The notes below the pieces were generated by a model. That model did not search any database, was not told the origin of the DNA, and saw only the letters and a list, made by a program, of their open reading frames with translations. Positions 2,642-27,977 of a stretch of 64,000 bases of DNA are shown here, one piece after another. Position numbers and translations under genes: made by a program. The stretch covers positions 124,001-188,000 of IMG/VR virus record IMGVR_UViG_3300032288_004964; one strand, written 5' to 3'. The stretch's first letter is position 1, and each line of letters begins with the position of its first letter.

Positions 2642-3451
2642 ATGAGATTAAAAGAATCATTAAAAGATTTAATAGTAAATTCCGTTTTATATACAATTAC
2701 TTTAATTAGAAGCCTTTTTGGTAAAATGGAAAAGAGTAACTCTAATATTACTTCTAAAATGGAGTTAATATTTGAGGATAATTTTCAATCATTTAATAAA
2801 GATGTTTGGAGAATTGGTCAACCTTGGGGTAAATTTCATCCAGGTTCTCCTTATCAATATTATGGAGATGAATCTGTTTTTATACAAAATGACTGTTTGG
2901 TATTAAATCAGATATATTCACCTAAACAATTAACTACTTGGGAAGATCCTAAAGTATATGATATACCTTACTCTGTTGGATTGATAACATCATATGAAAG
3001 TTATGGATATGGATTTTATGAATTTGAAGTAGAACTACCTTATGGTTCTGGATTATGGCCAGCAGTTTGGTTAAGTTGTGTTGATTCATGGCCTCCTGAA
3101 ATAGATATTATAGAAGCTTACTCTGATAATAAAGCTAATTATAAGAATAACTTACAATCAAATTTTCATTTCAATATGGAAGACAAAAAGGAGTCTTCTG
3201 GTGCTAGAAATCATCCAGTTAATGTTCCATATGATAAATTGAAATTGGGTTGCTGGTGGACTAAGGATTTCATTAAAATCTACTATAATGGACATCTAGT
3301 TAGACAAATTACATCTGATTATATTTTAAAATGGTTTAGAGATAAGAAAATGTTAATTATATTAAACAATGCTATTAGACCAGAATATACTAAGGATATA
3401 GAATCTCAAATTTCAGAATTTAGGATTTATAGTGTAAAAGTATGGAAGTAA
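2642..3451 (+). CDS. Glycoside hydrolase family 16 (laminarinase/beta-glucanase-like)
   Basis: GLWPAVW and WPPEIDIIE (ExDxxE catalytic motif); FEDNF and YGFYE segments. Confidence 0.85.
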   Translation: MRLKESLKDLIVNSVLYTITLIRSLFGKMEKSNSNITSKMELIFEDNFQSFNKDVWRIGQPWGKFHPGSPYQYYGDESVFIQNDCLVLNQIYSPKQLTTWEDPKVYDIPYSVGLITSYESYGYGFYEFEVELPYGSGLWPAVWLSCVDSWPPEIDIIEAYSDNKANYKNNLQSNFHFNMEDKKESSGARNHPVNVPYDKLKLGCWWTKDFIKIYYNGHLVRQITSDYILKWFRDKKMLIILNNAIRPEYTKDIESQISEFRIYSVKVWK

Positions 3452-3714
3452 TCATTGGAAGAAAATCAGATAGTTTGATTGAACAAGGTTATGTTTATGC
3501 TCCTTATATTCCAATTCAAACATCATCTGTTGTAAATGGATATGATTCTAAAAATACAAATAGAAAAAGAAAGATTAATAAGATATTTGGCTTAGGTTTA
3601 AATATTAAAGATGAATTCTTACCAAGTAAATCAATTACAAGTAGATACTCAACAAAGAATATAAATAGTAAATATTACGGAACTATAGAAATTAAAAACA
3701 CCACTCAAATTTGA
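3442..3714 (+). CDS. Small protein resembling the C-terminal segment of T4-like major capsid protein gp23, with an insertion
   Basis: GRK...EQGYVYAPYIP...F.P...ITSRY...YYG matches the gp23 C-terminal pattern GYKG..E.DAG.YYAPY...F.P....TRY (recalled from memory). Confidence 0.65.
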   Translation: MEVIIGRKSDSLIEQGYVYAPYIPIQTSSVVNGYDSKNTNRKRKINKIFGLGLNIKDEFLPSKSITSRYSTKNINSKYYGTIEIKNTTQI

Positions 3715-3725
3715 ATGGTGTTTTT
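3694..3725. terminator. Bidirectional intrinsic terminator
   Basis: AAAAACACCA-CTCAAATTTGAA-TGGTGTTTTT between convergent genes. Confidence 0.75.
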
Positions 3726-3744
3726 AATTTATTTCATATTTTAA

Positions 3745-4083
3745 TTATCTAATATATCCTGTTTTTTCTTCACCAGTTTTAAAGTTATAACAAGTTATTG
3801 AATCATGACCTGGTACAACAATAACATCACCAAATACAAATGGATTCATTATATCATATTCAAAAATAGCAACTTCAATTTTACCGTCTTTTACAATAAG
3901 TACAAACTCTCTACCTTCTTCATCAAATCCTTCTTTTAATTCAGAACCATCTGGTAATTTACTCAAATTTCTTCCAATTTCTATTTCACCTTCTATTTCA
4001 TCTGCTGTTAATGATCCTACTAATTTGAATCCTAAATCATCACCAGATTCCATGTCTTCGTTAAATTTTCTTAAGTGTTTCAT
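3745..4083 (-). CDS. Hypothetical protein with CTS-like N-terminus
   Basis: Starts MKHLRKFNED. Confidence 0.7.
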   Translation of the reverse strand: MKHLRKFNEDMESGDDLGFKLVGSLTADEIEGEIEIGRNLSKLPDGSELKEGFDEEGREFVLIVKDGKIEVAIFEYDIMNPFVFGDVIVVPGHDSITCYNFKTGEEKTGYIR

Positions 4084-4113
4084 ATTATTTTATTTTTTTT
4101 AAGTATTGAATCT

Positions 4114-4392
4114 TTATTTCAAATCACTAAGACTCATAATCATTTTTTTAGCTTTTTCGGAAAGACCATTTAAATATTGGTCAACATCTTGAATACTATT
4201 CACATCAGGATATCCATTTAAATCCATTTGCAAATTATCAAATGTAAACTCACCACTTAAACCTCCTTTTTTTAATCCATGTGCAAGTCCTCTATAATAA
4301 GCTTGTTCTATTAAATCGGAAATGTTTTTAATAGTTCTTTCTTCAGCTCTTACGAAGTTAATATCTTCATTGAATTTCTTTAAGTGTTTCAT
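4114..4392 (-). CDS. Hypothetical protein with CTS-like N-terminus
   Basis: Starts MKHLKKFNED. Confidence 0.7.
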   Translation of the reverse strand: MKHLKKFNEDINFVRAEERTIKNISDLIEQAYYRGLAHGLKKGGLSGEFTFDNLQMDLNGYPDVNSIQDVDQYLNGLSEKAKKMIMSLSDLK

Positions 4393-4409
4393 AATTTATA
4401 TTTTTTTTA

Positions 4410-4976
4410 CTAGAAATAAGTTTGTTCAAAGTAAAGAACTTCAAATTTATTCTCATGATTTACTAACATTATCGCATTTAATAAGTCAGAATATTCAGCA
4501 ACTGCATCATTTTGAATATTAACATATCCTTGAATAAAATTAAATGTAGCTGGATGAACATTAAGCGATGATTTTTGACCTTCTGAATATTTTCCAAAAA
4601 GACCATATTCCATTTCATAAGCTAAACCAACAATCTCAACTAAATTATTAAATGTTTTTGTAGTTGGAGCTTGTGGTATAACTGGAAGTAAGTTCCATTG
4701 TGTTAAATAATCTTGAAGACCTTTAGCATGTTCTAATTCTGAACTAGCTTCGGCTTCAAAGAAAGAAGCAGCTTTTTTATAGTTCATATTTTTACACCAG
4801 TTAGCAGCGTTTCTATAGAAATAGTGAGCAGTATATTCATCTCCAATTCTATCATTTAGCATTTTTTCAATTGCCTCTGGAAGTACATTAGGTTTAACTA
4901 CACCACCTTCCATTTTTGTTTCTTCTTCTTGTTGAACTTGTGCCTGAGCTTGTGTTCCGAATTTTTTAATTTCCAT
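4410..4976 (-). CDS. Ferritin (non-haem, FtnA-like)
   Basis: LNDRIGDEYTAHYFY...A.FF...ASSELEHA four-helix ferroxidase pattern; Q..AVAE helix. Confidence 0.8.
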   Translation of the reverse strand: MEIKKFGTQAQAQVQQEEETKMEGGVVKPNVLPEAIEKMLNDRIGDEYTAHYFYRNAANWCKNMNYKKAASFFEAEASSELEHAKGLQDYLTQWNLLPVIPQAPTTKTFNNLVEIVGLAYEMEYGLFGKYSEGQKSSLNVHPATFNFIQGYVNIQNDAVAEYSDLLNAIMLVNHENKFEVLYFEQTYF

Positions 4977-4987
4977 GTGTTTGTATT

Positions 4988-5518
4988 TTATTTATTGTAA
5001 GTCAATTTATAAATTGTTCTATAAAGTAAAGCAACAACTTCATCAATTAAATTATGTAGATGTGTGTCTTCTTGTTTAATACAAGTTCTTTCTGTTTTAA
5101 CAAACTCAACAACTTGTTTATAATATTCTAATTTATCAGTTGATTTAGTTTCCTTAGTATCAATTACATCATATTCTTCAATAAGACCGTACTGACCTTG
5201 ATAAGTTTCAACTATTTCATCAATGTGTTCAATTACACCAGTGTAATAAGCTTCTAATGCTAAGTGAGCGGCGTGTGAACCCATATCGCCTTTAACAGTC
5301 CAGTGATAAACTTGAGCCATCTCTCTACTTTCTAATAATTTGGAGATAAACTTAGAAACTGATCCAGCTTCTTTACTTTCTTCTTTTTTATCTTCTGCTT
5401 TCTCTTCCGCTTTTTCTTCAGAACCTTCTGGTAGATTTGCTTTTGGCATACCCGCCATCATATCTTGATCCTCATTTAACTTTTTTAGTGGTGTTTTAAA
5501 ATCTGAAAACTTTTTCAT
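4988..5518 (-). CDS. Dps/ferritin-like four-helix protein (phage type) with CTS-like N-terminus
   Basis: YHWTVKG...HLALEAYY...IDEIVE, a Dps-like HW...H...D...E pattern. Confidence 0.7.
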   Translation of the reverse strand: MKKFSDFKTPLKKLNEDQDMMAGMPKANLPEGSEEKAEEKAEDKKEESKEAGSVSKFISKLLESREMAQVYHWTVKGDMGSHAAHLALEAYYTGVIEHIDEIVETYQGQYGLIEEYDVIDTKETKSTDKLEYYKQVVEFVKTERTCIKQEDTHLHNLIDEVVALLYRTIYKLTYNK

Positions 5519-5562
5519 ATTGTTTATTATTTTTAATAGAGTATATATTATTTATTTAAAAT

Positions 5563-5602
5563 AAAAAATCCTCATAAGTATATATTAAAAACTTATGAGG
5601 AT
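5563..5602 (-). terminator. Intrinsic terminator with a late-promoter-like box in its loop
   Basis: 12-bp stem ATCCTCATAAGT/ACTTATGAGGAT followed by a U-tract on the minus strand. Confidence 0.65.
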
Positions 5603-5623
5603 ATATTTAATTAATGTAAAATA

Positions 5624-6106
5624 TTACATTTTTATTCCATTTAACCACTTATTAACTTGTTTTTCCGCCATATCACATATTTGTTCTTTGGTGAATCCCA
5701 TATGAGCCATTATATCGAATATCATTATTAAACAATCTGTGGATTCTAATAGAATATTATAGTTAATTCTACCTTCATCTTCTGTTGTTCTTTTATATCC
5801 TTTTAATTTAAGAATTTCTGCTGACAGTTCGCCATATTCTTCGCCTAATTTAAGACCTCTTTCAATTAAGCCATGTTTTTCATATTTAGAAGCGTTTATA
5901 ACTAAGTCATAAACATAATCAATTAATGTTTCAGAGATTATTTCTTCTTCTACTGGTTTTGACTTTCTTTCAAACTCTTCTATTAAGATTGTTAAAATTG
6001 AAACTTTATTAGACTCTTCTTTAGATAATTCTACTCCGTGAATAGACTCTAAATACTTTTGAGCCTGTTGATAATCATACTGATTTGTTATTGGTTTTAG
6101 TTCCAT
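5624..6106 (-). CDS. HigA-like N-terminal domain fused to MazG-like NTP pyrophosphohydrolase
   Basis: LKPITNQYDYQQA...ILTILIEEFE (HigA N-domain-like); KLGEEYGEL...ESTD (MazG EExxE...ExxD). Confidence 0.7.
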   Translation of the reverse strand: MELKPITNQYDYQQAQKYLESIHGVELSKEESNKVSILTILIEEFERKSKPVEEEIISETLIDYVYDLVINASKYEKHGLIERGLKLGEEYGELSAEILKLKGYKRTTEDEGRINYNILLESTDCLIMIFDIMAHMGFTKEQICDMAEKQVNKWLNGIKM

Positions 6107-6165
6107 AATTTGAAAATGTGAAAATTAAATTTAATATATACTATGTAAAAAATATAAGATTATAT

Positions 6166-6432
6166 ATGAAATATGTAAAAAAGTTTGAGTCATTTGTTTC
6201 TGAGAAGTTAGTTGCTACTCAACCAGCTCCTTCTAAACCAGAAGTTGCTCCTGATACAATTGAGAAGCCTGCAATGCCAGCTACTCCAACACCTATTAAA
6301 AGAGATAGAACATCTCCAGTTCCTGCTCCAGCAAAAATGGTAAAAGCAACTGCAATGGATGTTGCTGAAAGATTTATAGAACTTGTTAACAAATCAGGAG
6401 ATGATATTAAAAAATATACAGAGATAAAATGA
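6166..6432 (+). CDS. Pro-rich hypothetical protein with CTS-like N-terminus
   Basis: Start moved to ATG 6166 (MKYVKKFESFVSE), downstream of AATATATA at 6133-6140. Confidence 0.7.
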   Translation: MKYVKKFESFVSEKLVATQPAPSKPEVAPDTIEKPAMPATPTPIKRDRTSPVPAPAKMVKATAMDVAERFIELVNKSGDDIKKYTEIK

Positions 6433-7946: not shown

Positions 7947-7952
7947 AAATAT

Positions 7953-9920: not shown

Positions 9921-9921
9921 T

Positions 9922-9949
9922 AAAAAACCCACTCTAAAGTGGGTTTTTT
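9922..9949 (+). terminator. Intrinsic terminator
   Basis: AAAAAACCCACT-CTAA-AGTGGGTTTTTT. Confidence 0.8.
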
Positions 9950-9966
9950 ATTTGATATATACTTCA

Positions 9967-9974
9967 TATATTTG
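9967..9974 (+). promoter_or_regulatory. Bacteroidota-type -7 box TAnnTTTG
   Basis: TATATTTG 4 nt upstream of ATG 9979; same octamer found at five other gene starts. Confidence 0.55.
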
Positions 9975-9978
9975 TTAA

Positions 9979-10206: not shown

Positions 10207-10253
10207 CTTGGGATATATACGGTAATCCTGTTCTTCTAGATATAGAAGAATAA

Positions 10254-11264
10254 CTACTTTTTAAGTATTTGATGACTCTGAAGTAGTTTATTAAAATCAA
10301 AATAGTCCTTTTCTATTATAAATAGAAAATTATAACCATTCATCACACAATACTTTTCCTTCATTATATTTTTATCCAAATCAATATTATAAGTATAACT
10401 TGATTTTATTTCAATTATCAAATTTAGTTTTTCTATAAAAAAATCAGAATGATATGTGTGATTAGTGTTATTTGATTCTAAGATATATTCAATCGATGGT
10501 CCATTTGAAATTAAATCTATAATATTATTATTTTCACAATAATTCAAAAAATCTAACTCATATGAACCCTGTGTGAATAACTCATCATTATAGTATATTA
10601 TTTTATAAGATGATAGTAATTGTTTTTTAAAAACATTACAATCTTTCATTGGGTTTGTGACACCGTAGTTTAATAAAAAAGAGTTCTTCTTTTTATTCTT
10701 AACCTCTTCTATTTTTGAAACATTATTTACTCCGTAGTTAATTAATAATCTATCAACCATTTTATTTTTTATTTCATCTGATTGACTTGGATGTTTAACT
10801 CCATATCTTCTAATCATTCCTTCGGTCATTAGTTCTCTAATCTTGAAAGGACTATCTACTCCATAATTTAAAAGTGTAGTTTTTGATTTTTTATCTTTTA
10901 TTTCTTTAGATTTAGATGGATTATCTACTCCATAGTTCTTTAAGAAGGTCTTTATTTTTTTATCTTGAAAGTCCTTATTTAGTGATAAGTTATTATTTTT
11001 AAAATAAAATGATCTTTTTTTTAGTCCACAAGTCTTACAACTATAAATTCCATTTCTTTTTACATTTAAATTATATTTTGAATATCTAATTTCAGATTCA
11101 CTATTACATAAATCACAAATAGCAATAATTTTTACTTGAGATGACTTTTTTAAATCAATCACTTTTATTTCAATCTCATCATTTGAAAAGTCATATCCTA
11201 AATTTGAATAGTTTTGTTTTAGACCAGATGTTACTTTAAATTTTATAAATTTATCCTTTATCAT
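10254..11264 (-). CDS. Putative free-standing homing endonuclease (Zn-ribbon, YGV.NP repeats, PD-(D/E)XK-like C-terminus)
   Basis: CDLC and CKTC; five NYGVDNPS-type repeats; YHSDFFI...IIEIKS. Confidence 0.7.
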   Translation of the reverse strand: MIKDKFIKFKVTSGLKQNYSNLGYDFSNDEIEIKVIDLKKSSQVKIIAICDLCNSESEIRYSKYNLNVKRNGIYSCKTCGLKKRSFYFKNNNLSLNKDFQDKKIKTFLKNYGVDNPSKSKEIKDKKSKTTLLNYGVDSPFKIRELMTEGMIRRYGVKHPSQSDEIKNKMVDRLLINYGVNNVSKIEEVKNKKKNSFLLNYGVTNPMKDCNVFKKQLLSSYKIIYYNDELFTQGSYELDFLNYCENNNIIDLISNGPSIEYILESNNTNHTYHSDFFIEKLNLIIEIKSSYTYNIDLDKNIMKEKYCVMNGYNFLFIIEKDYFDFNKLLQSHQILKK

Positions 11265-11281
11265 AAGGTATATATTAAAAC

Positions 11282-11995: not shown

Positions 11996-12074
11996 AGTCT
12001 ATATAGTAAGATTCTACCCTTCTATCAACAAAGCGTTATTTTTATGATATGTGATTTTTAATATATAGATTATT

Positions 12075-12809: not shown

Positions 12810-12813
12810 ATTA

Positions 12814-13288: not shown

Positions 13289-13741
13289 ATGACAGGACAT
13301 AAATTAAATAACTCAGAAGCTCTTAAATTTATCTTTGCTGGTAAATCAATTGTTACTTTACTTAATTCAAAAACTGGTAATAGATTCACTTTTAAAATAA
13401 AAGCCGCTAAAAATTCTAATCTTTATTTTGTTAGTGTTTTAACTAATCCCGAAACCTACTCCTATATTGGAACTTGCACTGAAGGATTTTTTAGACACGG
13501 TAAGAAATCAGTGATTTCTAAAGAAGCTCAGTCTGTTAAAGTATTTGAATATGTTCTTAATAAATTAAAAATAAATAACCTACCCGACTTTGTTGAGGTT
13601 TGGCATGAAGGAAAGTGTGGAAAATGTGGTAGAACACTTACTGTTCCTTCAAGTATCATCACTGGAATCGGACCAGAATGTGCTAAATCCTTGTCTAAGG
13701 CAGATAAAAGAGACAACTTCCTTAAATTAATACTTTCATGA
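13289..13741 (+). CDS. DUF6011-like Zn-finger protein
   Basis: HEGKCGKCGRTLTVPSSI..GIGPEC. Confidence 0.75.
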   Translation: MTGHKLNNSEALKFIFAGKSIVTLLNSKTGNRFTFKIKAAKNSNLYFVSVLTNPETYSYIGTCTEGFFRHGKKSVISKEAQSVKVFEYVLNKLKINNLPDFVEVWHEGKCGKCGRTLTVPSSIITGIGPECAKSLSKADKRDNFLKLILS

Positions 13742-14196
13742 TAAAATTTATATTCTTAACTATTCCTTTTATTTTTGTTATTTTTTTCTTCTTTCTTAAA
13801 AAGAGGAGAAAATCTATTTCTTTTGAGATTAGATATGGTCTTAAATGTTATTCTTGCATGGAGGATCTAACAGAAGATGGGGATTATTTTTTGGGGTCTC
13901 ATTCTAAAGAAGAGATAAAGATATGTAAAGTTTGTAATAGAGAGGAAAAATTTAATACTTTACATGATAAGTTTAATGTTAATAGAGTAAAAAGATTTCT
14001 TCTTTCTAAAAAATCTGAAAAATTTCAAAATATTATTTTGATGTTATCAATTGTATTTATAGCTATAGATGCTACTTTAATTTACAGATATAATATTAGA
14101 TGGTTTTGGATATTTAATAGTATAGCTAACCTAATATTCTGGTTAATTTTCTTTCTAAGATACTATGTTACTACAATAAAAAAACCCTCTAATTAA
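13738..14196 (+). CDS. Membrane protein with CxxC...CxxC
   Basis: N-terminal TM, CYSC/CKVC, two C-terminal TMs. Confidence 0.65.
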   Translation: MIKFIFLTIPFIFVIFFFFLKKRRKSISFEIRYGLKCYSCMEDLTEDGDYFLGSHSKEEIKICKVCNREEKFNTLHDKFNVNRVKRFLLSKKSEKFQNIILMLSIVFIAIDATLIYRYNIRWFWIFNSIANLIFWLIFFLRYYVTTIKKPSN

Positions 14197-14694: not shown

Positions 14695-15927
14695 CTAACT
14701 AAAGATATCATCCGCATCTGCTGAATCAACAAATCCATTTGAATCATCATCTTCATCATCACCCATTACTTCATTAAATTTCTTTTCAACTTCTTCAATC
14801 TCATCTAATGATTTAAATCTGAAATAATCATTTACAATTGGTGCCATTTTTTCTAAAACTGTTGGTGTAAATATCTCAGCAGAAAATAGTTGTTTAGTTG
14901 GAACTGATTTATTTAAGTGATTTACATACCATCTGTTACCACCAGGTACAAAAGTCATTTCTCCTGTTTTCTTATCAACATCCATTTTACCACAAGCAAT
15001 TCCTATTTGATCAAAATACTCTGGTCTACAGAATGCGTCTAATCCAGTATATGGATTCATACCATGTGCAAAAGAGATATCAAATCTAATTTTCTTTGGT
15101 TTAGCCATACGGTTTTTTGATGTTTTGAAAAGAACTGAAATACCTGATTGACCTAAATCCATATCATCTTCTTCTCCTGTTTTTAGTTTAGATTTGCTCA
15201 TAAATCCAATTACTGATGCTGAATACAATAAACCATTACCTCCCTTTAATTTCTCGGCTGGATAGAGATCTAAAGTTAAGTATGTATGGTTACAAACGAT
15301 CATAGGTATTTCCAAATATCCTAAATCTGTATTAATAGATCTGAACATAGATCCTAAAGCTTTTGCTTTTGTCATATCTTGTTTAATATCACCTTTTAAT
15401 AAATCTGCTTTTTCTTTATTTGATGCCATTTGACCAAGTGAGTCAAGTACAATCATTAGTTTAGGTATTTCGTATCCATCTAACTTTTGTTGTTTTAAAT
15501 CATCAACTAGTTGTGTTAATAAAATATTAACATCTTCTACTTTATTAGATCTAATTAGTCTGAATTTTTCTAAAGATGGATCAATTCCAAATTTTGGTAA
15601 ATCTTCTAAGTCAATTGCTTGTTCAGTATCAATATAAATAACTGAATATCCTGCTTTCTGTGCGTGTTTAGAAACAGAATAAGCGATAAATGATTTACCT
15701 GCTCCTGATTCTCCAGCGAATGCTGTTATTCTATTAGTAGCCACACCACCACCTAATAATTTACCAGATAAAGCAGCGTCTAATAAATAAACTCCTGTTG
15801 TGATGAATTTCTTTTCTTTAATTTCTTTTTCAATTTGAATAGGAATTGATTTTGCTATATTATCTAAAATCGAACCAATCTTACTGAATTCGAATTTTTT
15901 TACTTCTTTTGCTTCCTTTTTAGCCAT
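14695..15927 (-). CDS. uvsX: UvsX/RecA-like recombinase
   Basis: Walker A GESGAGKS; YIDTE; IVLDSLG; NHTY; GG.GL.YSAS. Confidence 0.9.
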   Translation of the reverse strand: MAKKEAKEVKKFEFSKIGSILDNIAKSIPIQIEKEIKEKKFITTGVYLLDAALSGKLLGGGVATNRITAFAGESGAGKSFIAYSVSKHAQKAGYSVIYIDTEQAIDLEDLPKFGIDPSLEKFRLIRSNKVEDVNILLTQLVDDLKQQKLDGYEIPKLMIVLDSLGQMASNKEKADLLKGDIKQDMTKAKALGSMFRSINTDLGYLEIPMIVCNHTYLTLDLYPAEKLKGGNGLLYSASVIGFMSKSKLKTGEEDDMDLGQSGISVLFKTSKNRMAKPKKIRFDISFAHGMNPYTGLDAFCRPEYFDQIGIACGKMDVDKKTGEMTFVPGGNRWYVNHLNKSVPTKQLFSAEIFTPTVLEKMAPIVNDYFRFKSLDEIEEVEKKFNEVMGDDEDDDSNGFVDSADADDIFS

Positions 15928-16043: not shown

Positions 16044-17108
16044 ATGACTAAGCAAGAATTTCTATATAGAGCTAGAGAAAAACACGGATATAAATATCAA
16101 TATCCCAATCTAAGTGATAAAATTTTATCAAATGATGATATAGATATAATTTATAATGATGTTTTGTATAAGCAAAAAGTAGTTAAACATATAACTTTGG
16201 GTAGATGTCCTGAAAAAAATACACCTAAAAAAACAACAGAGGATTTTATTAGAGAGGCTGAGGAAGTTTGGGGTAAAGGAAAATATGATTACTCATTAAC
16301 AGAGTACAAGGGAGCTCTTAGAAATATTAAAGTTATATATGATGGTATAGTATTTAACCAAATAGCATCTACACACTTAAGATCTGCTCCTGAATTAAAT
16401 ATGAATAGAGATTGGTTTATTAAGAGGTCTCAAGATAAATGGGGAAAAGATAAATATGATTACTCTTTAGTTGAGTATAAACATTGTAAGTCAAAAGTTA
16501 AAATAATATATAATAAGACAGGAGAGGTATTTGAACAAACTCCACACTTACACTTATATAGAGCACCTGAAAATATTAAATTAGCTGTTAGAAAAACAAC
16601 AGAACAATTTATAAAGGAATCAAATATAGTACATGATAATAAATATTTATATGATAAGACAGAGTATATTAAAAATCAAATAAAAGTTATTATAACTTGT
16701 CCTATACATGGTGACTTCTCTCAAATACCACTTTCTCATATACAAGGTAGTGGATGTCCAAATTGTAATGAATCTAAGGGTGAGAAAGAAATTGCAAAGT
16801 TTCTCAATAAGTATGATATAAATTATGATAGACAACATAAATTTTCAGATTGTAAAAATATATTTCAACTACCTTTTGACTTCTATATTCCTTCTATTCG
16901 TACTTGTATTGAGTTTGATGGTAAACAACATTATGAACCAATTGATTACTTTGGGGGAGTAAAAGCTTATGAGTCACTTAAACTAAATGATAAAATCAAA
17001 TCTGACTATTGTGAAGATAATTATATTAGTTTAATTAGGATTAGATATGATCAGATTGATGATATTTGGAGAATACTTTGGGATAATCTAAAGGAACATA
17101 TTAAATAA
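16044..17108 (+). CDS. Putative free-standing homing endonuclease (KYDYS repeats, C-terminal very-short-patch/PD-(D/E)XK-like nuclease)
   Basis: Repeated F..RA...G.KYDYS.VEY; CPIHG...GCPNC; PFDFY...IEFDGKQH...D..K...LIRI. Confidence 0.75.
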   Translation: MTKQEFLYRAREKHGYKYQYPNLSDKILSNDDIDIIYNDVLYKQKVVKHITLGRCPEKNTPKKTTEDFIREAEEVWGKGKYDYSLTEYKGALRNIKVIYDGIVFNQIASTHLRSAPELNMNRDWFIKRSQDKWGKDKYDYSLVEYKHCKSKVKIIYNKTGEVFEQTPHLHLYRAPENIKLAVRKTTEQFIKESNIVHDNKYLYDKTEYIKNQIKVIITCPIHGDFSQIPLSHIQGSGCPNCNESKGEKEIAKFLNKYDINYDRQHKFSDCKNIFQLPFDFYIPSIRTCIEFDGKQHYEPIDYFGGVKAYESLKLNDKIKSDYCEDNYISLIRIRYDQIDDIWRILWDNLKEHIK

Positions 17109-18766: not shown

Positions 18767-18776
18767 AGTTTATATA

Positions 18777-20063: not shown

Positions 20064-20080
20064 TAAACTATATATTATTT

Positions 20081-20953: not shown

Positions 20954-21061
20954 TAATATGTTTATTTTTATGTTTTATATATCTAAATTATCATAGTTTA
21001 ATCAAAAAAAATTCCATGAGTAAAAGTTAAAAGGGAAAGTCCTTTTTATAATATATAACTT

Positions 21062-21892: not shown

Positions 21893-21898
21893 TATCCT

Positions 21899-21906
21899 TA
21901 TATTTG
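21899..21906 (+). promoter_or_regulatory. Bacteroidota-type -7 box
   Basis: TATATTTG 4 nt before ATG 21911. Confidence 0.6.
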
Positions 21907-21910
21907 TAAT

Positions 21911-22516
21911 ATGAATATATGGTTTACATCAGACACACATTTTGGACACACTAACATTGCTGGTCCTAAAATTTCTAATTGGTCTTCAGGATACAGAAAC
22001 TTTAACTCTGTACATGAAATGAATATGACACTTGTTGATGGTATCAACAAATATGTTAAAGAAGATGATATACTTTATCATCTTGGTGATTGGAGCTTTG
22101 GAGGATCTCAAAATATATTTCAATTCAGAAATTATCTTATATGTAAGAATATACACTTGATTTTAGGCAACCATGATCAACATATAGTTGATAAAGAGAT
22201 AAACTATCATGATACATCATTTAATCCAGTTGAACTTTTCTCATCTGTTCAAGATGTTCTAACTTTAGATATTGGTAAAACAAAACTATTTTTATCACAT
22301 TATTCACATAGAGTTTGGTTGGGTAGTCATAAGGGTGTTATACATCTTTATGGCCACTCACACGGATCTATTCCCGATTATGGAAAATCTATGGATGTTG
22401 GTGTTGATGTTGCTTTTAAGAAGTTTGGAGAATATAGACCTTTTAATATTGGCGACATCACTAATATTATGTCAAAGAGAAGTATAGAGAAAATTGATCA
22501 CCACGGAGATATGTAG
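21911..22516 (+). CDS. Calcineurin-like metallophosphoesterase
   Basis: SDTH, LGD, GNHD, SHY, GHSH. Confidence 0.9.
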   Translation: MNIWFTSDTHFGHTNIAGPKISNWSSGYRNFNSVHEMNMTLVDGINKYVKEDDILYHLGDWSFGGSQNIFQFRNYLICKNIHLILGNHDQHIVDKEINYHDTSFNPVELFSSVQDVLTLDIGKTKLFLSHYSHRVWLGSHKGVIHLYGHSHGSIPDYGKSMDVGVDVAFKKFGEYRPFNIGDITNIMSKRSIEKIDHHGDM

Positions 22517-22517
22517 T

Positions 22518-22682
22518 ATGAGAAAATTAGAATCTGAATTATCCTATTATAAAGTTTTAATTAATTCTCAGTATGGTACAAATACCAGTACAACAATGTT
22601 AGATAAAGCCTATCAACTAAGAAGAAAAATTATCACTGTAAAAAATAGAAAAAATAAAATTAAAAAGATATTTAATATATGA
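22518..22682 (+). CDS. Small protein containing family-B DNA polymerase motif B plus R-tag
   Basis: KVLINSQYG (KxxxNSxYG); C-terminal NRKNKIKKIF; start moved to ATG 22518. Confidence 0.55.
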   Translation: MRKLESELSYYKVLINSQYGTNTSTTMLDKAYQLRRKIITVKNRKNKIKKIFNI

Positions 22683-23008
22683 TAGATAGATGGGATTGTC
22701 AAAGAGTTGTTTGTATAAAAGAATATAAAACTCTTAAAATAGGTAGTCATTATGATATTAAGGGTAGAGGTAATTTAGAATTTAATGCTGATAAAGAAGT
22801 TGGTGATAAAAGAGGATATGGATATTGTGTAGAAGATGGTCTCTATGGTTCCTACTCTGGTAAAAAAGATTGGTGGAAATTACCATATGCTGAGAAAGTT
22901 AAGTGGTATTATTTTACTGAGGAAGAAATGTCTGAATATTTTATAACAGAAGAAGAAGATTATAAAGTATATTTAAGAGACGAAAAACTAAAACAATTGC
23001 TTAATTAA
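22679..23008 (+). CDS. Hypothetical protein with C-terminal R-tag
   Basis: Ends LRDEKLKQLLN. Confidence 0.7.
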   Translation: MIDRWDCQRVVCIKEYKTLKIGSHYDIKGRGNLEFNADKEVGDKRGYGYCVEDGLYGSYSGKKDWWKLPYAEKVKWYYFTEEEMSEYFITEEEDYKVYLRDEKLKQLLN

Positions 23009-23009
23009 C

Positions 23010-23882: not shown

Positions 23883-24502
23883 TAGATATTTTTGATAAGA
23901 AACCGATTGATTTGGCAAATATTATTTGTCACTCTGGTGGTGCTGAAGGCTCAGATACTGCTTGGGAGAAAATTGGTGAAAAGTTTGGTGTTAAAACAAA
24001 AGCTTACTCATATAAAACTAAGGTACATACTTCACCAAACAAAGTAGAAATATCTGATGAAGATTATAAAGAAGGTATTTCTGAAGTCAATAAGGCAAAT
24101 AAGTTTTTGAATAGATATGGAATCCATAAATATATGAATCTCTTAGCACGTAACTGGGCACAAGTTAAATATTCTAAACAAATATTTGCAATAGGAACTA
24201 TTATTAAACCAGGTGAGAAGAATTCAAAGGGTTACTACAATAAAGGTAAGTATGATATAATTGATGGTGGTACTGGATACGCTGTTCAAATGGGTATTAA
24301 TAATGAAAGAGAAGTTTTTGTTTTTGATCAAGTAAGAGATAAATGGTTTAGATGGTCTTATTCTACTCTAAAATTTGTAGAGATTAAAGATATTCCTACT
24401 ATAACTAATAATGATTTTGCCGGTATAGGAACAAGAGAATTAGAACCAAACGGGTTGAAGGCAATTCGTGATGTATATGATAAATCCATAAAAAATAAAT
24501 AA
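23879..24502 (+). CDS. SLOG-superfamily (DprA/YpsA-like Rossmannoid) protein
   Basis: HSGGAEGSD...LLARN...GGTGYAV...VFVFDQ; start moved to ATG 23879. Confidence 0.65.
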   Translation: MIDIFDKKPIDLANIICHSGGAEGSDTAWEKIGEKFGVKTKAYSYKTKVHTSPNKVEISDEDYKEGISEVNKANKFLNRYGIHKYMNLLARNWAQVKYSKQIFAIGTIIKPGEKNSKGYYNKGKYDIIDGGTGYAVQMGINNEREVFVFDQVRDKWFRWSYSTLKFVEIKDIPTITNNDFAGIGTRELEPNGLKAIRDVYDKSIKNK

Positions 24503-24506
24503 TATA

Positions 24507-24977
24507 ATGACAAAGATGATTTTAACATCAGAAGGTAAAAAGAAGCTATTAGAAGAACTACACTTTTTATCAACAACAGAAAAAACAAGAATGATAAATG
24601 AACTTGCTGATGCTAGAGATAGAGGTGGTGTTTCTGAAAACTCAGAGTATGAAATTGCTAAAGATGAATATCAAAAACTACAAGTTAAAATAGTTAATTT
24701 AGAGGAAAAAATTGCCAATTCGGTTTTGATTAGCACTGCCGGTATTGATACTGAACAAGTTTCTGTTTTATCAACTGTAAAAGTTCTTAATAAGAAAACT
24801 AATACCGAAGTTAAATTCACAATAGTTACTGAAACAGAGATTGATATTAAAGCTGGTAAAATATCCTTAAATAGTCCTATTGCGGTTGGACTGTTAGGAA
24901 AAAAAGTAGGTGAAACTGCAAAAGTTGTTATCCCTGCTGGAACACTTGAGTTTGAAATTTTAGAAATAACTGCGTAA
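24507..24977 (+). CDS. greA: Transcription elongation factor GreA-like
   Basis: LT.EG..KL.EEL; ARDRGGVSENSEY; ISL.SPIA.GLLGKKVG...P.G. Confidence 0.9.
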   Translation: MTKMILTSEGKKKLLEELHFLSTTEKTRMINELADARDRGGVSENSEYEIAKDEYQKLQVKIVNLEEKIANSVLISTAGIDTEQVSVLSTVKVLNKKTNTEVKFTIVTETEIDIKAGKISLNSPIAVGLLGKKVGETAKVVIPAGTLEFEILEITA

Positions 24978-24978
24978 T

Positions 24979-25374
24979 ATGAAGATAAGTTTTGATTTTG
25001 ACGGAACACTAGATGATGAGTTTGATGGTGGATATAACATCTCAAAGGAAGAGATTCAATCACTTGCTAAAAAATATGTTGATGAAGGAAATGATGTTTG
25101 TATCATAACTAAAAGATATGACTCTAATAATAGACATATGGGTAAAGGAAATGAACACATTATTGTTTATGACTTAGCCAAAGAATTAGGAATTACTAAA
25201 ATTTATTTCACTAACAGAGAAATGAAGTTCTCACATATTCTAAATTTAGGAATTGAAATGCACTTTGAAAACTCTGAATATGAGGTTAGTTTGATAAATC
25301 TAGCTTGTAAACAGAAGGATCATAACTGTATAGTTGTTCACGTGGAAAACCCAAATTGGAGAGAATCTTTATGA
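24979..25374 (+). CDS. HAD-superfamily protein
   Basis: ISFDFDGTL. Confidence 0.7.
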   Translation: MKISFDFDGTLDDEFDGGYNISKEEIQSLAKKYVDEGNDVCIITKRYDSNNRHMGKGNEHIIVYDLAKELGITKIYFTNREMKFSHILNLGIEMHFENSEYEVSLINLACKQKDHNCIVVHVENPNWRESL

Positions 25375-26225
25375 AGATAATTAAAGCAAAATATTCTAAG
25401 GTAGATGTTACTGATATTATAAAACAAAAAGTTGTAAATGATAGACTTGTTATTAAAGTAGATAACAACATCTGTGGTGATCCTGAAGTTGGAGTTGTTA
25501 AGTCACTAACTATTGATTATGAATTAGAAGGTAAGTTGCTAACAAAATCATGTTTGGAAAACTCTATTTTGTCAATTCCTGATTCTAAATATGACAGACT
25601 TGGTATATTTTATTCTAATAATAACAATCCTGCAACTTATAAAACAATTAATGATTCTTTAGAGTCTATTAAAATTGCTAGTGAGGGAAAAGCTGATATT
25701 TTAACCTGTGTTTGGAATTCAATTCCAACAAATCCATTTATTCAAATAATTGCACAGACTAAAACATCATCACATCTAAATCAAGTTTTACAGATACTAC
25801 AATTACTATATACCGCTAGAAATATCAATCAGTATAAATATGTTTCCTTTTTAGAACATGATTGTTTATATCCTGTTGGTGTATTTGATTACCCTGACTT
25901 TGAAGAAGGATTAATATGTAATATGAATTATATCGGAGTTTGTAAAGGTGGTTGGCAAAAAAGAAATCAAGATGATAAACCTCTATCTCAAATTACTATG
26001 AAGTTTGATGATGCTATTAAACACTTTGAATCTATTTTACCCAATGCTATTTTAACAAACTCTGGATTAGTTGAACCTCAATTAAAAATCAAAGAATGGA
26101 GAAGTGAGAATTCATCGGTTCATGTTAATCACGGTCATCATTTTACATCACATTTTAGTATTTATAGTAAGAATAATTTAATTGAAGAACACTCTTATTG
26201 GGGAAGTTGGAGAAAATATTTATAA
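25371..26225 (+). CDS. Putative glycosyltransferase (GT-A-like) with N-terminal lectin-like domain
   Basis: AKY..DVT...GDP..GVVKSL.IDY N-domain; FLEHDCLY DxD-like motif. Confidence 0.55.
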   Translation: MKIIKAKYSKVDVTDIIKQKVVNDRLVIKVDNNICGDPEVGVVKSLTIDYELEGKLLTKSCLENSILSIPDSKYDRLGIFYSNNNNPATYKTINDSLESIKIASEGKADILTCVWNSIPTNPFIQIIAQTKTSSHLNQVLQILQLLYTARNINQYKYVSFLEHDCLYPVGVFDYPDFEEGLICNMNYIGVCKGGWQKRNQDDKPLSQITMKFDDAIKHFESILPNAILTNSGLVEPQLKIKEWRSENSSVHVNHGHHFTSHFSIYSKNNLIEEHSYWGSWRKYL

Positions 26226-26255
26226 ATAGTATCTTTGAATAATAATATATAATGT

Positions 26256-26732
26256 ATGATTAAATTCAGTCATATGATAAATGAAAGTGAAAGTTATAAA
26301 TTTAAATTAGGTTTAGATTTACATGGTGTTATTGATTCAATGCCTAAAGAATTTGCATTTCTAACAAATGCTATTGTTTCTGCTGGTGGTGAAGTACACA
26401 TATTAACAGGTGGTTCTTGGACACCTGAATTGGAAAACCAAGTAAAATCATATGGTATAAAATGGACTCACAGTTTTTCAGTTTATGACCATTTGATAAA
26501 AACTGCTAAAACTGTTGGTGAAATACAATTCCCGGATGGTACTATTCAAAAGAAATTTGAGAATGGTGTTTGGGATCATGTAAAAGCTGATTATTGTAGA
26601 GAGAACGGTATATCATTGCATATAGATGATACACTAATTTACAATGATTTCTTTACTACACCATTTGCTAGATTATGGACTCATACTAATACACCAAAGG
26701 GGTCACATAAAGATGTAAGACATTTAGATTAA
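26256..26732 (+). CDS. HAD-like protein with CTS-like N-terminus
   Basis: LGLDLHGVI...ILTG...K...HIDD; starts MIKFSHMINES. Confidence 0.65.
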   Translation: MIKFSHMINESESYKFKLGLDLHGVIDSMPKEFAFLTNAIVSAGGEVHILTGGSWTPELENQVKSYGIKWTHSFSVYDHLIKTAKTVGEIQFPDGTIQKKFENGVWDHVKADYCRENGISLHIDDTLIYNDFFTTPFARLWTHTNTPKGSHKDVRHLD

Positions 26733-26733
26733 T

Positions 26734-27210
26734 ATGATTAGTAGATGGTTTGATTTTGATCCGTTTGAAAGTAAGATGAAGAAGTCTGCGGGAGTTATTA
26801 TTATATTAAATGGACAAAAGGTTCTACTTTGTCATCCAACTAACTCAAGATGGTTTGGTACTTACTCATTTCCTAAAGGTGGACTAAATAAAGGAGAAAC
26901 AGAAATAGATGCTGCTATTAGAGAATTAAGAGAAGAATCATCAATTGTTATTGATAAATCTAAAATTACAAATCCAAATAGTCCTATTATTGTTGATTAT
27001 GTCAATAAAAAAGGTGAAAAAAAGTATAAACAACTTTATTTATATACAGTTTATATAAATGATATTTCTGAAATTGGATTAGATTCTGAAATAATTCCAA
27101 AAGAAAAACTACAACTATCCGAGATTGATTGGTGTGGATTTTTACCTAAACAAGAAGCCAAACATAGAATTTTCTATAGAGTTGTTCATCTGTTAGATAT
27201 GATAAACTAA
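26734..27210 (+). CDS. Nudix hydrolase
   Basis: PKGGLNKGETEIDAAIRELREES Nudix box. Confidence 0.88.
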   Translation: MISRWFDFDPFESKMKKSAGVIIILNGQKVLLCHPTNSRWFGTYSFPKGGLNKGETEIDAAIRELREESSIVIDKSKITNPNSPIIVDYVNKKGEKKYKQLYLYTVYINDISEIGLDSEIIPKEKLQLSEIDWCGFLPKQEAKHRIFYRVVHLLDMIN

Positions 27211-27246
27211 ATACTATTTTATAGTATAATAAATAAAAATATTATT

Positions 27247-27591
27247 ATGCTTGATAAAATTGAATTAGATTTAAATAATCCTATATTTGTCGCTTATGTT
27301 GATGTTAAAAATATGAGTAGACAATCGGCAGAAGAATATCTTATCAGAACTAAAGAAAATTTTGAAATTTACAAAAATATCACCGTTTGGACAATTGCTT
27401 CTGATCAAACTAAAATTGAATGTGTTTATGATGGTAAGTCCAAAATTAGAGAAAAAGAATTAAATGACTTAATAAAAGAAATAAATACAAGAATAGATAT
27501 AATGTCTCAATCACATTCTTTTGAAGATTTTAAGATAAATATCAGAGATTGGAGAATAAATAATATTATAGATGGCGATAACCAAAAATAA
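27247..27591 (+). CDS. Small protein with T4 portal (gp20)-like segment plus R-tag
   Basis: IFVAYVDVKNMSRQSAEEYL versus gp20 (V/I)(W/F)Y(V/I)D.GN(M/L)P..KAE.(Y/H); C-terminal IRDWRINNII. Confidence 0.55.
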   Translation: MLDKIELDLNNPIFVAYVDVKNMSRQSAEEYLIRTKENFEIYKNITVWTIASDQTKIECVYDGKSKIREKELNDLIKEINTRIDIMSQSHSFEDFKINIRDWRINNIIDGDNQK

Positions 27592-27977
27592 AACCGAATT
27601 AATTGATAGAACCATATCATTAGAATCCGCTATTGAAGAATACTTTAGTGAAGGATATGATGATTACTATTATGATGATTTTTACTATGGTTGTTGTTGC
27701 TCAGCCTGTAATGGTTATTATACTGATGATTTTGAATATTTAGAAGATGAGAAGTGTAATCTAATTTATTTATTTATTTAGAAGAGGTATATTAATGTCT
27801 TTTGGCAAAAAACCTCAGATTGGTAGAATGATTGATATGAAAACGGTTTATTCAAAGGATATAATGAGACAAAAAAATATAGATATAGTATTAGGTTTGT
27901 CAAAAGAGTTTCAAAAAATAACAATAGGTGATTTATATGAAGAATATAGAAATATTCAGGGGAAGTTGGACAGTTGA
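27572..27977 (+). pseudogene. Gene split by a (TTTA)4 tract (ORFs 27572-27781 and 27795-27977)
   Basis: Removing one TTTA unit at 27765-27780 fuses the two ORFs in frame (LIYLFRRGILMSFGK). Confidence 0.55.

What the first reader, a model, noticed from the sequence alone, without database searches (positions are those of the whole stretch)
3442..27977. Recurrent short R-[DEKQ]-x-[KR]-[ILF]-x-x-[IL] tag on at least seven unrelated small proteins
Instances: RKRKINKIF (3442), RDNFLKLIL (13289, C-terminal), REEKFNTL (13738), RKNKIKKIF (22518, C-terminal), RDEKLKQLL (22679, C-terminal), RDWRINNII (27247), RQKNIDIVL (27795). It is an amphipathic helix, mostly terminal. It is absent from the CTS-tagged set and lies mostly in operons behind non-late promoter boxes. 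Inference: a docking motif for one hub (phage or host protein, protease adaptor or membrane complex).
Basis: partly seen in the sequence, partly recalled or inferred. Interest (0 to 1): 0.7.

Follow-up and report, generated by a model that had tools for sequence, protein, structure and literature searches.

The report
Shared C-terminal tag on phage proteins
About one in ten proteins of this huge Bacteroidota phage, all unrelated and mostly small non-late-class proteins, end in the same ten-residue tag (R-D/E/N-x-K-I/L-x-x-I/L-L/G-x), which looks like an undescribed address or destruction label read by one common, still unidentified receptor.

Summary
In the 385-kb genome that holds the window, 44-47 of 479 ORFs end in R-[DEN]-x-K-[IL]-x-x-[IL]-[LGIF]-x-COOH, against about 0.1 expected from shuffles. 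The Arg lies exactly 10 residues from the end in most cases.

Two related huge phages carry it too: LR756502 on 133-150 of 987 ORFs, and LR756504 on 118 of 947 ORFs as a variant, R-K-x-[KRI]-I-x-x-L-L-COOH. The 735-kb phage LR756501, Prevotella phage Lak-A1 and T4 have none.

- The signal is in the protein, not the DNA: synonymous codons vary, all three stop codons are used, and downstream DNA differs.
- The tagged proteins are unrelated to each other.
- In a 110-member orthologous family the tag's R and K are among the best conserved residues.
- Arg is never replaced by Lys (R in 105 of 107, K in 0).
- The tag is helical in two AlphaFold models.
- Tagged genes avoid the late promoter box (1 of 44) and sit behind host-type TAnnTTTG boxes.

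The receptor is unknown. The best lead is co-occurrence with a phage ClpS and an N-domain-less ClpC-like unfoldase that has a ClpP-docking loop. This suggests a degradation tag for non-late (presumably early) proteins. That step is inference only.

The parts
13709..13741 (+). C-terminal tag RDNFLKLILS plus stop, on ORF 13289-13741 (150 aa)
   Evidence: Matrix score 13.6 bits, R at -10. The ORF was left out of my greedy gene set because it overlaps a minus-strand ORF.
22647..22682 (+). C-terminal tag RKNKIKKIFNI plus stop, on ORF 22494-22682 (62 aa). It belongs to the R-K...IF subtype.
   Evidence: 18.9 bits, R at -11.
22976..23008 (+). C-terminal tag RDEKLKQLLN plus stop, on ORF 22679-23008 (109 aa)
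   Evidence: 24.9 bits, R at -10. Among 110 homologues R is kept in 107 and K in 108, and ...ILN and ...LGI endings interchange. AlphaFold gives pLDDT 91.9 with the tag inside helix 91-108.
27544..27591 (+). C-terminal tag RDWRINNII followed by six residues (DGDNQK) and the stop, on ORF 27247-27591 (114 aa)
   Evidence: 18.6 bits, R at -15. The tag is kept at -15 in 119 of 120 homologues, some of which JGI names 'antirestriction protein'. AlphaFold places it in helix 93-111 at low pLDDT, so it is not packed on the core.
27448..27474 (+). Second, internal tag-like helix REKELNDLI in the same ORF 27247-27591
   Evidence: 13.6 bits. R, E, L and the spacing are conserved in the family. It lies in helix 66-88.
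3562..3588 (+). Internal tag-like copy RKRKINKIF (residues 41-49 of 90) in ORF 3442-3714
   Evidence: 16.9 bits, but 50 residues from the C-terminus. It is one of about 24 internal copies in the genome, against about 2.6 expected.
13939..13962 (+). Not a member.
   Evidence: Matrix score -6.8 bits, internal.
27867..27893 (+). Doubtful.
   Evidence: 9.9 bits (below the threshold), internal, in a 60-aa ORF that overlaps ORF 27928-29031.

Best explanation
The tag is a protein-level, helical short linear motif at the extreme C-terminus: R-[D/E/N]-x-K-[I/L]-x-x-[I/L]-[L/G/I/F]-x-COOH. It has been added to many unrelated, fast-evolving, mostly small proteins of the non-late class. All of them can therefore be recognised by one common receptor that is specific to this phage lineage.

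Shown:
- the motif, its position and its selection;
- its modular spread over unrelated proteins;
- its restriction to one subclade of huge Bacteroidota phages, with a lineage-specific variant;
- its exclusion from late genes.

Inferred, as the most likely mechanism: the tag is a degradation or hand-over signal for the phage's own Clp set. That set comprises a ClpC-like unfoldase that lacks the N-domain but keeps a ClpP-docking VGF loop, ClpP in the larger relatives, and a ClpS adaptor behind a late-type promoter box. Under this model, proteins made from host-type promoters (presumably early) are removed once the phage-specific programme starts.

Confidence is about 0.85 that this is a docking or recognition tag for a common receptor. 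It is about 0.3-0.35 that the receptor is the Clp system. The figure given below refers to the full statement.
For: Enrichment and position:
- 44-47 tagged ORFs in this genome against about 0.1 expected, with R exactly at -10 in most.
- The same holds in LR756502 (133-150 of 987 ORFs), and as a variant in LR756504 (118 of 947).

Protein level, not DNA level:
- I/L codons vary (ATA, ATT, TTA, CTA, CTT), all three stop codons occur, and downstream DNA is unrelated.

Modular spread and selection:
- The cores are unrelated.
- Only 3 of 82 tagged proteins have a Pfam domain. One is a riboflavin kinase with the tag on a C-terminal extension.
- In one orthologous family R is kept in 107 of 110 and K in 108 of 110.
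- The tag is kept in 12 of 19 full-length G000/LR756502 homologue pairs at 33-50% identity. By eye a sub-threshold tag variant is kept in 4 of the other 7.

Specific recognition:
- Arg is present in 105 of 107 cases and Lys in none, although Lys is 2.4 times commoner in the proteome.
- The tag is helical in two models and flexible in one.

Gene class:
- Only 1 of 44 tagged genes has its own late box (the AATATATA box that precedes the capsid, portal and terminase genes). 22 of 44 lie behind TAnnTTTG.
- There is 1 tag in 1377 ORFs of 80 late-region loci of the same clade.

Clp link:
- ClpS (PF02617) is found in all four tag-bearing genomes and in neither LR756501 nor Lak-A1 at E<=1. BLASTP also found no T4 homologue.
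- The Hsp100 protein of the tag-bearing genomes lacks Clp_N and has a VGF loop. The LR756501 homologue has an N-domain and no such loop, and Lak's is ClpX-like.
- ClpP is present three times each in LR756502 and LR756504.
- ClpS carries a late-type box.

The tag pattern is not enriched in four Bacteroidota genomes, so it is a phage-specific code.
Against: - No physical or predicted contact between the tag and any Clp protein has been shown.
- The co-occurrence reflects a single evolutionary branch, and 21 other genes share the same profile.
- ClpS is known as an N-degron reader, and the phage copy keeps the N-degron pocket residues (compared from memory with E. coli ClpS). A C-terminal tag is therefore not its expected ligand.
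- No ClpP was found in this genome, which is 95% complete.
- About a quarter to a third of matches are internal or N-proximal. That fits a docking motif better than a pore-engaged C-terminal degron.
- In one model the tag is part of a well-ordered helix, whereas classical degrons are disordered.
- The timing of expression is inferred from promoter-like boxes only.
Confidence: 0.35

Rival explanations
1. It is a sorting or encapsulation signal. The tag docks the proteins onto a phage-built scaffold, compartment or replication factory, like the encapsulation peptides of microcompartments, the cargo-loading peptides of encapsulins or the T4 capsid-targeting sequence. It does not mark them for proteolysis.
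For: - A short terminal helix sits on many unrelated cargo proteins, including enzymes (riboflavin kinase, BtpA).
- It can sit at the C-terminus, near the N-terminus or between domains, as encapsulation peptides do (my knowledge).
- It shows a lineage-specific variant.
- The hydrophobic i, i+3, i+4 pattern with basic residues is typical of helix-in-groove docking.
Against: - No BMC shell or encapsulin gene occurs in three tag-bearing genomes.
- Tagged genes are not co-expressed with capsid genes, judged by promoter boxes. Packaging into the virion is therefore unlikely.
- No compartment protein is known for this clade.
Confidence: 0.2
2. It is a docking motif for a host hub, for example the host ClpA/ClpC N-domain, RNA polymerase, the ribosome or a chaperone. 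Many host-takeover proteins would then be concentrated on one host machine.
For: - The tagged proteins are made from host-type promoters.
- One tagged family is named antirestriction protein by a source.
- The lineage variants could track different host genera.
Against: - The tag pattern is not enriched among proteins of four Bacteroidota genomes, so no native clients of such a hub are visible.
- It is hard to see why 10-15% of a proteome of unrelated proteins should bind one host enzyme.
- The closest tag-free relative, LR756501, shares host-like genes but has no tag.
Confidence: 0.15
3. It is a membrane-targeting amphipathic helix of the MinD/FtsA kind that brings these proteins to the inner membrane.
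For: It is a terminal helix of 9-10 residues with basic and aliphatic residues. Its size and position are similar to the MinD membrane-targeting sequence (my knowledge).
Against: - Arg is never replaced by Lys, and Asp/Glu/Asn is required next to it.
- There are only three hydrophobic residues.
- Membrane helices tolerate conservative swaps and are not this invariant.
- In the LR756504 variant position 2 changes from acidic to Lys in concert across more than 100 proteins. That points to a co-evolving protein partner.
Confidence: 0.07
4. It is a recognition site for a modifying enzyme: Arg-specific ADP-ribosylation or phosphorylation, or C-terminal processing by the phage M16 or DUF2201 metallopeptidase.
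For: - The Arg is invariant, at a fixed distance from the C-terminus.
- The phage encodes an M16 peptidase with an intact HxxEH site, and a DUF2201 metallopeptidase-VWA protein.
Against: - M16 is also present twice in the tag-free LR756501.
- I did not look for an Arg-modifying enzyme.
- Nine conserved positions are more than most modification sites need.
Confidence: 0.06
5. It is chance, AT-rich composition, or a DNA/RNA element (promoter, terminator or coupling signal) that happens to be translated.
For: The genome has 28.7% GC, so K, I, N and L are abundant. Genes are tightly packed.
Against: - The enrichment is more than 100-fold over shuffles.
- There are zero hits in equally AT-rich Lak-A1 and in LR756501 and T4.
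- Synonymous codons, stop codons and downstream sequence all vary.
- The tag is conserved at amino-acid level in diverged orthologues.
Confidence: 0.01

Closest known systems
C-terminal degradation tags read by Clp/AAA+ proteases and their adaptors (ssrA tag with SspB/ClpX/ClpA; MuA-type C-motif 2)
   Same: Both are a short peptide at the extreme C-terminus that is transferable in principle and marks unrelated proteins for one machine. A Clp unfoldase with a ClpP-docking loop, ClpP (in the relatives) and a Clp adaptor are encoded by the tag-bearing phages.
   Different: The sequence is unrelated to ssrA or MuA tags. This tag is genetically encoded on 10-15% of the proteome rather than added by tmRNA, and no tmRNA is present. 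It is helical, the last residue is variable, and internal copies exist. Degradation has not been shown.
T4 capsid-targeting sequence, encapsulin cargo-loading peptides and microcompartment encapsulation peptides
   Same: All are a terminal peptide of about 10-18 residues shared by unrelated proteins and docking into a groove of one scaffold or shell protein. Some members are enzymes.
   Different: Tagged genes are not in the late class. No BMC or encapsulin shell is present. The consensus differs. The number of tagged proteins (47-150 per genome) is far larger.
Hub-docking boxes on expanded viral or effector families (poxvirus ankyrin PRANC/F-box; PIP-box clamp binders)
   Same: Both place a conserved C-terminal box on many otherwise diverse proteins, linking them to one hub. 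The spacing of key residues (positions 1, 4, 7, 8) equals that of a PIP-box (my knowledge).
   Different: There is no Gln or aromatic pair as in a PIP-box. Replication enzymes carry no tag. The cores here are not one repeat family but unrelated folds.
Phage-encoded ClpS in other jumbo phages (Iyer et al. 2021, PMC7824862; Agrobacterium phage Atu_ph07 gp708, PMC6102473)
   Same: Both are a ClpS adaptor gene captured from the host phylum. Here the nearest homologues are all Bacteroidota at 45-61% identity.
   Different: Those reports describe no proteome-wide tag. Here ClpS co-occurs with the tag and with an N-domain-less ClpC-like unfoldase. The N-terminal extension of the phage ClpS is basic, whereas those of cellular Bacteroidota ClpS are acidic.

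Membership tests
Short linear docking motif (generic SLiM) | Short (3-10 residue) conserved pattern on otherwise unrelated proteins, under selection | tested here: met
   Nine informative positions with no conservation upstream. The cores are unrelated. R and K are conserved in 107 and 108 of 110 orthologues.
Short linear docking motif (generic SLiM) | A defined binding partner | tested here: inconclusive
   There are 22 lineage-matched candidate genes, including ClpS. The one complex prediction gave no answer.
C-terminal Clp degron (ssrA-like) | Located at the extreme C-terminus | tested here: met
   R lies at -9 to -11 in 140 of 177 tags. However, about 20-35% of all matches are internal.
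C-terminal Clp degron (ssrA-like) | Cognate unfoldase-peptidase present | tested here: inconclusive
   A ClpC-like protein with a VGF loop is present in all tag-bearing genomes tested. ClpP is present in LR756502 and LR756504 but not found in this genome.
C-terminal Clp degron (ssrA-like) | The tag is sufficient and necessary for degradation | not testable with these tools
   This needs half-life or in-vitro degradation assays.
ClpS N-degron substrate | N-terminal Leu/Phe/Tyr/Trp presented to the ClpS pocket | tested here: not met
   The motif is C-terminal or internal and begins with Arg.
Capsid-targeting or encapsulin cargo-loading peptide | Cargo co-expressed with the shell or capsid and carrying the shell-binding consensus | tested here: not met
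   Only 1 of 44 tagged genes has the late box that precedes the capsid, portal and terminase genes. No Linocin_M18 gene is present.
Microcompartment encapsulation peptide | BMC shell proteins encoded | tested here: not met
   PF00936 is absent from this genome, LR756502 and LR756504 at E<=0.1.
Membrane-targeting amphipathic helix (MinD/FtsA type) | Degenerate amphipathic pattern that tolerates K/R and hydrophobic swaps | tested here: not met
   Arg in 105 of 107 cases and Lys in none. An acidic or amide residue is fixed at position 2.
PIP-box or clamp-binding motif | Q-x-x-[ILM]-x-x-[FY]-[FY], present on replication enzymes | tested here: not met
   Position 1 is D/E/N and positions 7-8 are aliphatic. 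Tagged proteins are small proteins of unknown function, with no Pfam replication domains among 82 scanned.

The most novel reading that the evidence does not exclude
A virus-encoded, proteome-wide peptide code. One genetically encoded C-terminal decapeptide marks 10-15% of the phage's proteins, namely its non-late (presumably early) accessory and host-takeover set. A dedicated phage machine reads it, most plausibly the N-domain-less ClpC-like/ClpP protease with ClpS. This would give the phage a programmed, collective removal or relocation of that protein set. The code itself drifts between lineages (R-D..K.. to R-K..) together with its reader.
Probability: 0.25. Interest if true: 0.88.

Novelty: new variant of a known kind. 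Interest (0 to 1): 0.8.

Why it matters
Huge phages carry hundreds of small genes of unknown function, and nothing links them. A shared, strongly selected tag defines a functional class: about 47 proteins here and more than 100 in each of two relatives. It says that these proteins are handled together by one receptor.

If the receptor is the phage's Clp set, this would be, to my knowledge, the first phage with a built-in degradation code for its own early proteins.

The tag also gives practical handles:
- a ten-residue bait to fish out the receptor;
- a predictor for non-late accessory and anti-defence genes in uncultured phages;
- possibly a portable tag for Bacteroidota.

I found no description of it in the papers on these phages.

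Tried and rejected
- **Complex prediction.** The phage ClpS plus the 109-aa tagged protein gave no answer (score 0.00, mark 0.32). This is neither support nor evidence against.
- **M16 peptidase as receptor.** It has an intact HLMEH site and is present in the tag-bearing genomes. It is also present twice in the tag-free LR756501, so it does not track the tag.
- **DNA-level element.** Rejected on codon, stop-codon and downstream variation.
- **Paralogous family.** Rejected by all-against-all BLASTP with the tags removed.
- **Pfam and PHROGs on 82 tagged proteins.** Three Pfam domains and only unnamed PHROGs, with no domain covering the tag.
- **Foldseek of the 109-aa model against the PDB.** No match at E<=0.001.
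- **tmRNA that might encode the tag.** None in the genome.
- **BMC shell and encapsulin genes.** None.
- **Host clients of the tag.** The pattern is not enriched in four Bacteroidota genomes.
- **Broader, independent co-occurrence of ClpS and the tag in IMG/VR.** The 80 loci returned are all close relatives and cover the late region, which holds 1 tag in 1377 ORFs. This served only as a negative control.
- **A strict DNA proxy pattern.** It wrongly suggested that LR756504 lacks the tag. Protein-level analysis showed a variant there.
- **Identity as a 'Jug' gut phage (PMC12880540).** Size and GC fit, but this is unverified. The nearest relatives are LR756502 and LR745206, and the nearest ClpS homologues are from Marinilabiliales, Flavobacteriales and other Bacteroidota orders rather than mainly gut Bacteroides.
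- **Atlas look-ups of two lineage-specific candidates.** They gave only a weak HAD-like lead and a viral family of proteins with a UVR (UvrB/UvrC) motif.
- **Similarity between the phage ClpS N-terminal extension (KVDQILS) and the second half of the tag.** I noted it but did not count it as evidence.

Full report
**Setting**

The window is bases 124,001-188,000 of a single 385,333-bp virus contig with 28.7% GC. It is an IMG/VR record, linear, and 95% complete by CheckV.

- A simple greedy ORF set gives 479 genes covering 94% of the contig under the standard code. Reading TAG as Gln does not improve coverage.
- By its UvsX-like protein, the nearest relatives in the phage collection are the uncultured huge phages LR756502 (642 kb, 89% identity) and LR745206 (635 kb, 82%). 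Then come LR756504 (636 kb, 54%), LR756501 (735 kb, 48%) and the Prevotella Lak phages (33%).
- From my own knowledge, these belong to the 'Mahaphage' group of Al-Shayeb et al. 2020.
- The host phylum is very probably Bacteroidota. The phage ClpS is closest to Bacteroidota ClpS at 45-61% identity. One class of promoter-like boxes is the Bacteroidota TAnnTTTG type.

**The observation**

Its coordinates are the starts of the ORFs that hold them.

- Four are genuine C-terminal tags: window 13709-13741, 22647-22682, 22976-23008 and 27544-27591.
- One (3562-3588) is a good internal copy.
- REEKFNTL is noise.
- RQKNIDIVL is below threshold and lies in a doubtful ORF.

**Enrichment**

It occurs 22 times in the last 15 residues against 0.18.
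- A position matrix built from the terminal copies finds 68 sites against 2.7 expected, 44 of them terminal against 0.07.
- With genome-specific refinement, 47 of 479 ORFs are tagged. That is 17% of all ORFs of 200 aa or fewer.
- The logo from 177 terminal tags (this genome plus LR756502) is R-[D55% E19% N19%]-x-K(70%)-[L/I]-[N/D/K/E/S]-[K/E/Q]-[I/L]-[L59% G19% I14%]-x-COOH. R is exactly ten residues from the end in 94 of the 177. There is almost no information upstream.
- An unseeded expectation-maximisation search on C-terminal 16-mers recovers the same motif in LR756502. It recovers more diffuse versions of it in this genome and in LR756504. Mid-protein 16-mers give nothing comparable.

**It is a protein signal**

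- At the two aliphatic positions the codons are ATA, ATT, TTA, CTA, CTT, TTG and ATC.
- TAA, TGA and TAG all follow the tag.
- The DNA behind the stop codon is unrelated from gene to gene.
- Real proteomes of comparable composition serve as negative controls. Lak-A1 (26% GC, read with TAG=Gln because table 11 covers only 72% of it), LR756501 (32% GC) and T4 have zero terminal matches. Their total counts equal the shuffle expectation.

**Who carries it**

- With the tags cut off, the 44 tagged proteins of this genome are 44 BLASTP singletons. The 133 of LR756502 fall into 129 groups.
- Their median length is 114 aa.
- Of 82 scanned, only three have a Pfam domain: a riboflavin kinase, DUF6011 and BtpA. 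In the riboflavin kinase of LR756502 the tag closes an extension of about 86 residues behind the enzyme domain. The tag has therefore been added to a captured enzyme.
- Most tagged genes have no homologue outside the closest relative. They are the fast-evolving accessory set.
- One tagged family of the window (27247-27591) is called 'antirestriction protein' by a source.

**Selection**

- The family of window ORF 22679-23008 has 110 aligned members at 48-85% identity. In it the tag's R (107 of 110) and K (108 of 110) are as conserved as the core Gly, Cys and Tyr residues. The endings ...[IL][LI]N and ...LG[IV] replace each other within this one family, so they are equivalent forms.
- Among 19 full-length homologue pairs between this genome and LR756502 in which this genome's protein is tagged, 12 keep the tag by the matrix. 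Four more keep a visible variant, at only 33-50% overall identity.
- Given the rest of the motif at a C-terminus, position 1 is Arg in 105 of 107 cases and Lys in none. Yet Lys is 2.4 times more frequent in these proteomes.
- Such strictness argues for a specific protein (or ligand) contact rather than general charge or membrane affinity.

**Structure**

- AlphaFold2 with family alignments puts the tag in a C-terminal helix in both proteins tried.
- In the 109-aa protein it is helix 91-108 at high confidence.
- In the 114-aa protein it is helix 93-111 at low confidence, behind a well-predicted core. That suggests a helix not packed on the domain.
- On a helix, R1, K4, I/L5, I/L8 and L9 fall on one face. 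This is my own geometric reading.

**Distribution and variants**

- LR756502 has 133-150 tagged ORFs of 987. Many lie in long arrays at both ends of the record.
- LR745206 has the tag by a DNA proxy, 20 hits against 0 for the control.
- LR756504 has 118 tagged ORFs of 947 with a shifted consensus, R-[K/Q]-x-[R/K/I]-I-[E/D/N]-x-L-[L/I]-COOH, and R at -9.
- LR756501, Lak-A1 and T4 have none.
- The concerted change of position 2 from acidic or amide to Lys across more than 100 proteins suggests a co-evolving reader.
- The pattern is not enriched in four Bacteroidota genomes, so it is a phage code.

**Expression class**

- A box (TT)AATATATA lies 4-5 nt or 18-26 nt before the ATG of 107 genes. These include the major capsid protein, portal and large terminase genes, identified by their T4 homologues.
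- Only 1 of 44 tagged genes has this box, against 106 of 435 untagged genes (p = 2e-4).
- The nearest upstream box of 22 of 44 tagged genes is TAnnTTTG, against 77 of 435 untagged (p = 5e-6). The bias holds among small proteins only.
- In 80 late-region loci of the same clade from IMG/VR there is 1 tag in 1377 ORFs.
- That TAnnTTTG units are early and host-transcribed is an inference from what is known of Bacteroidota promoters.

- Twenty-two genes of this genome have BLASTP homologues in LR756502 and LR756504 but not in LR756501, Lak-A1 or T4.
- One is a 94-aa ClpS (PF02617, E = 4.5e-18).
- A profile search finds ClpS in LR756502, LR745206 and LR756504. It finds none in LR756501 or Lak-A1, even at E<=1.
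- The ClpS gene has a late-type box and lies next to the terminase gene.
- The genome also encodes a 711-aa Hsp100 protein with AAA, AAA_lid_9, UVR, AAA_2 and ClpB_D2-small domains.
- In the tag-bearing genomes this protein lacks the Clp_N domain and has a VGF loop of the kind that docks ClpP.
- The LR756501 homologue has an N-domain and no such loop. Lak's is ClpX-like.
- ClpP is present three times each in LR756502 and LR756504 and twice in Lak-A1. It was not found in this genome or in LR756501.
- A small protein with a UVR (UvrB/UvrC) motif is also lineage-specific.
The evidence is one shared evolutionary branch plus functional plausibility.
- ClpS is classically an N-degron reader. The phage copy keeps the N-D-D-Y...H pocket residues (compared from memory).
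- The one complex prediction allowed gave no answer.

**Rejected or weakened alternatives**

- The M16 peptidase does not track the tag.
- There are no microcompartment or encapsulin shells.
- There is no tmRNA.
- Virion packaging is unlikely on promoter class.
- A membrane helix is unlikely on the strict Arg requirement.
- Chance and a DNA element are excluded.

**Literature**

Searches of the held library, and the papers on huge, Lak and Jug phages, mention no such motif. Phage ClpS genes are known (PMC7824862, PMC6102473), but not in connection with a tag.

**Verdict**

This is a real, strongly selected, lineage-specific C-terminal recognition tag on roughly a tenth of the proteome. Its reader is unidentified. 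A degradation or hand-over signal for the phage's own Clp set is the leading hypothesis, and a sorting signal is the main rival.

Noticed in passing
Outside the window: genome 370132-370204 (+) (L019:10132-10204): A tRNA with anticodon CTA (an amber suppressor; ARAGORN labels it tRNA-Pyl) occurs in a genome that otherwise reads as standard code. 49 of 479 ORFs end in TAG, some directly behind a tag. The related Lak phage clearly recodes TAG. About 37 tRNA genes lie in arrays at genome 236-283 kb.
   Followed up: partly
Whole genome; in the window for example 12075, 16044, 21062 and 26256 (+) (genome 136075, 140044, 145062, 150256): There are two promoter-like boxes. (TT)AATATATA lies 4-5 nt or 18-26 nt before the ATG of 107 genes, including the capsid, portal and terminase genes. 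TAnnTTTG (Bacteroidota type) often lies only about 4 nt before the ATG. Both spacings imply many leaderless or near-leaderless mRNAs.
   Followed up: partly
Outside the window: genome 48848-49132 (+), 285157-287292 (+), 223110-223517 (-): The phage has a Clp set: a ClpS with a basic N-terminal extension (cellular Bacteroidota ClpS extensions are acidic), a ClpC-like unfoldase without the N-domain but with a VGF loop, and a small protein with a UVR (UvrB/UvrC) motif. ClpP was not found in this genome, but three copies are present in each of two relatives.
   Followed up: partly
Outside the window: genome 210181-211299 (-) and 373966-375462 (+): There is a 372-aa M16 (insulinase-type) peptidase with an intact HLMEH zinc site, and a DUF2201 metallopeptidase plus VWA-like protein. 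The latter sits inside a region rich in tagged genes.
   Followed up: partly
window 14695-15927 (-), 16044-17108 (+), 10254-11264 (-): A UvsX-like recombinase gene is flanked by HNH/homing-endonuclease genes. Only the first ~254 residues of the 410-aa ORF match UvsX profiles, so the gene may be interrupted or fused.
   Followed up: no
window 27247-27591 (+): This tagged protein (family named 'antirestriction protein' by JGI for some members) carries two tag-like helices 32 residues apart. The internal one is R-[DE]-x-E-[IL]-x-D-L-[IV]. It lies just downstream of a NUDIX gene (26734-27210) and a possible HAD-like gene (26256-26732).
   Followed up: partly
Outside the window: genome 81791-81994 (+): A 67-aa ORF has 37% identity over 43 residues to T4 gp23 (major capsid protein) and a tag-like RKKSINKIFK near its end, far from the capsid gene at 30982-32664. 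It may be a gene fragment.
   Followed up: no
Outside the window: genome 264465-265922 (+), 109780-112332 (+), 318609-319574 (-): The phage encodes a class I Glu/Gln-type aminoacyl-tRNA synthetase and both subunits of a class I ribonucleotide reductase.
   Followed up: no
L246 (JALOAD010000112.1, 4,955 bp, binned as 'Candidatus Muiribacterium halophilum'): The best 'bacterial' ClpS match (67% identity) lies on a very short MAG contig. It is probably a fragment of a related phage that was binned by mistake.
   Followed up: no
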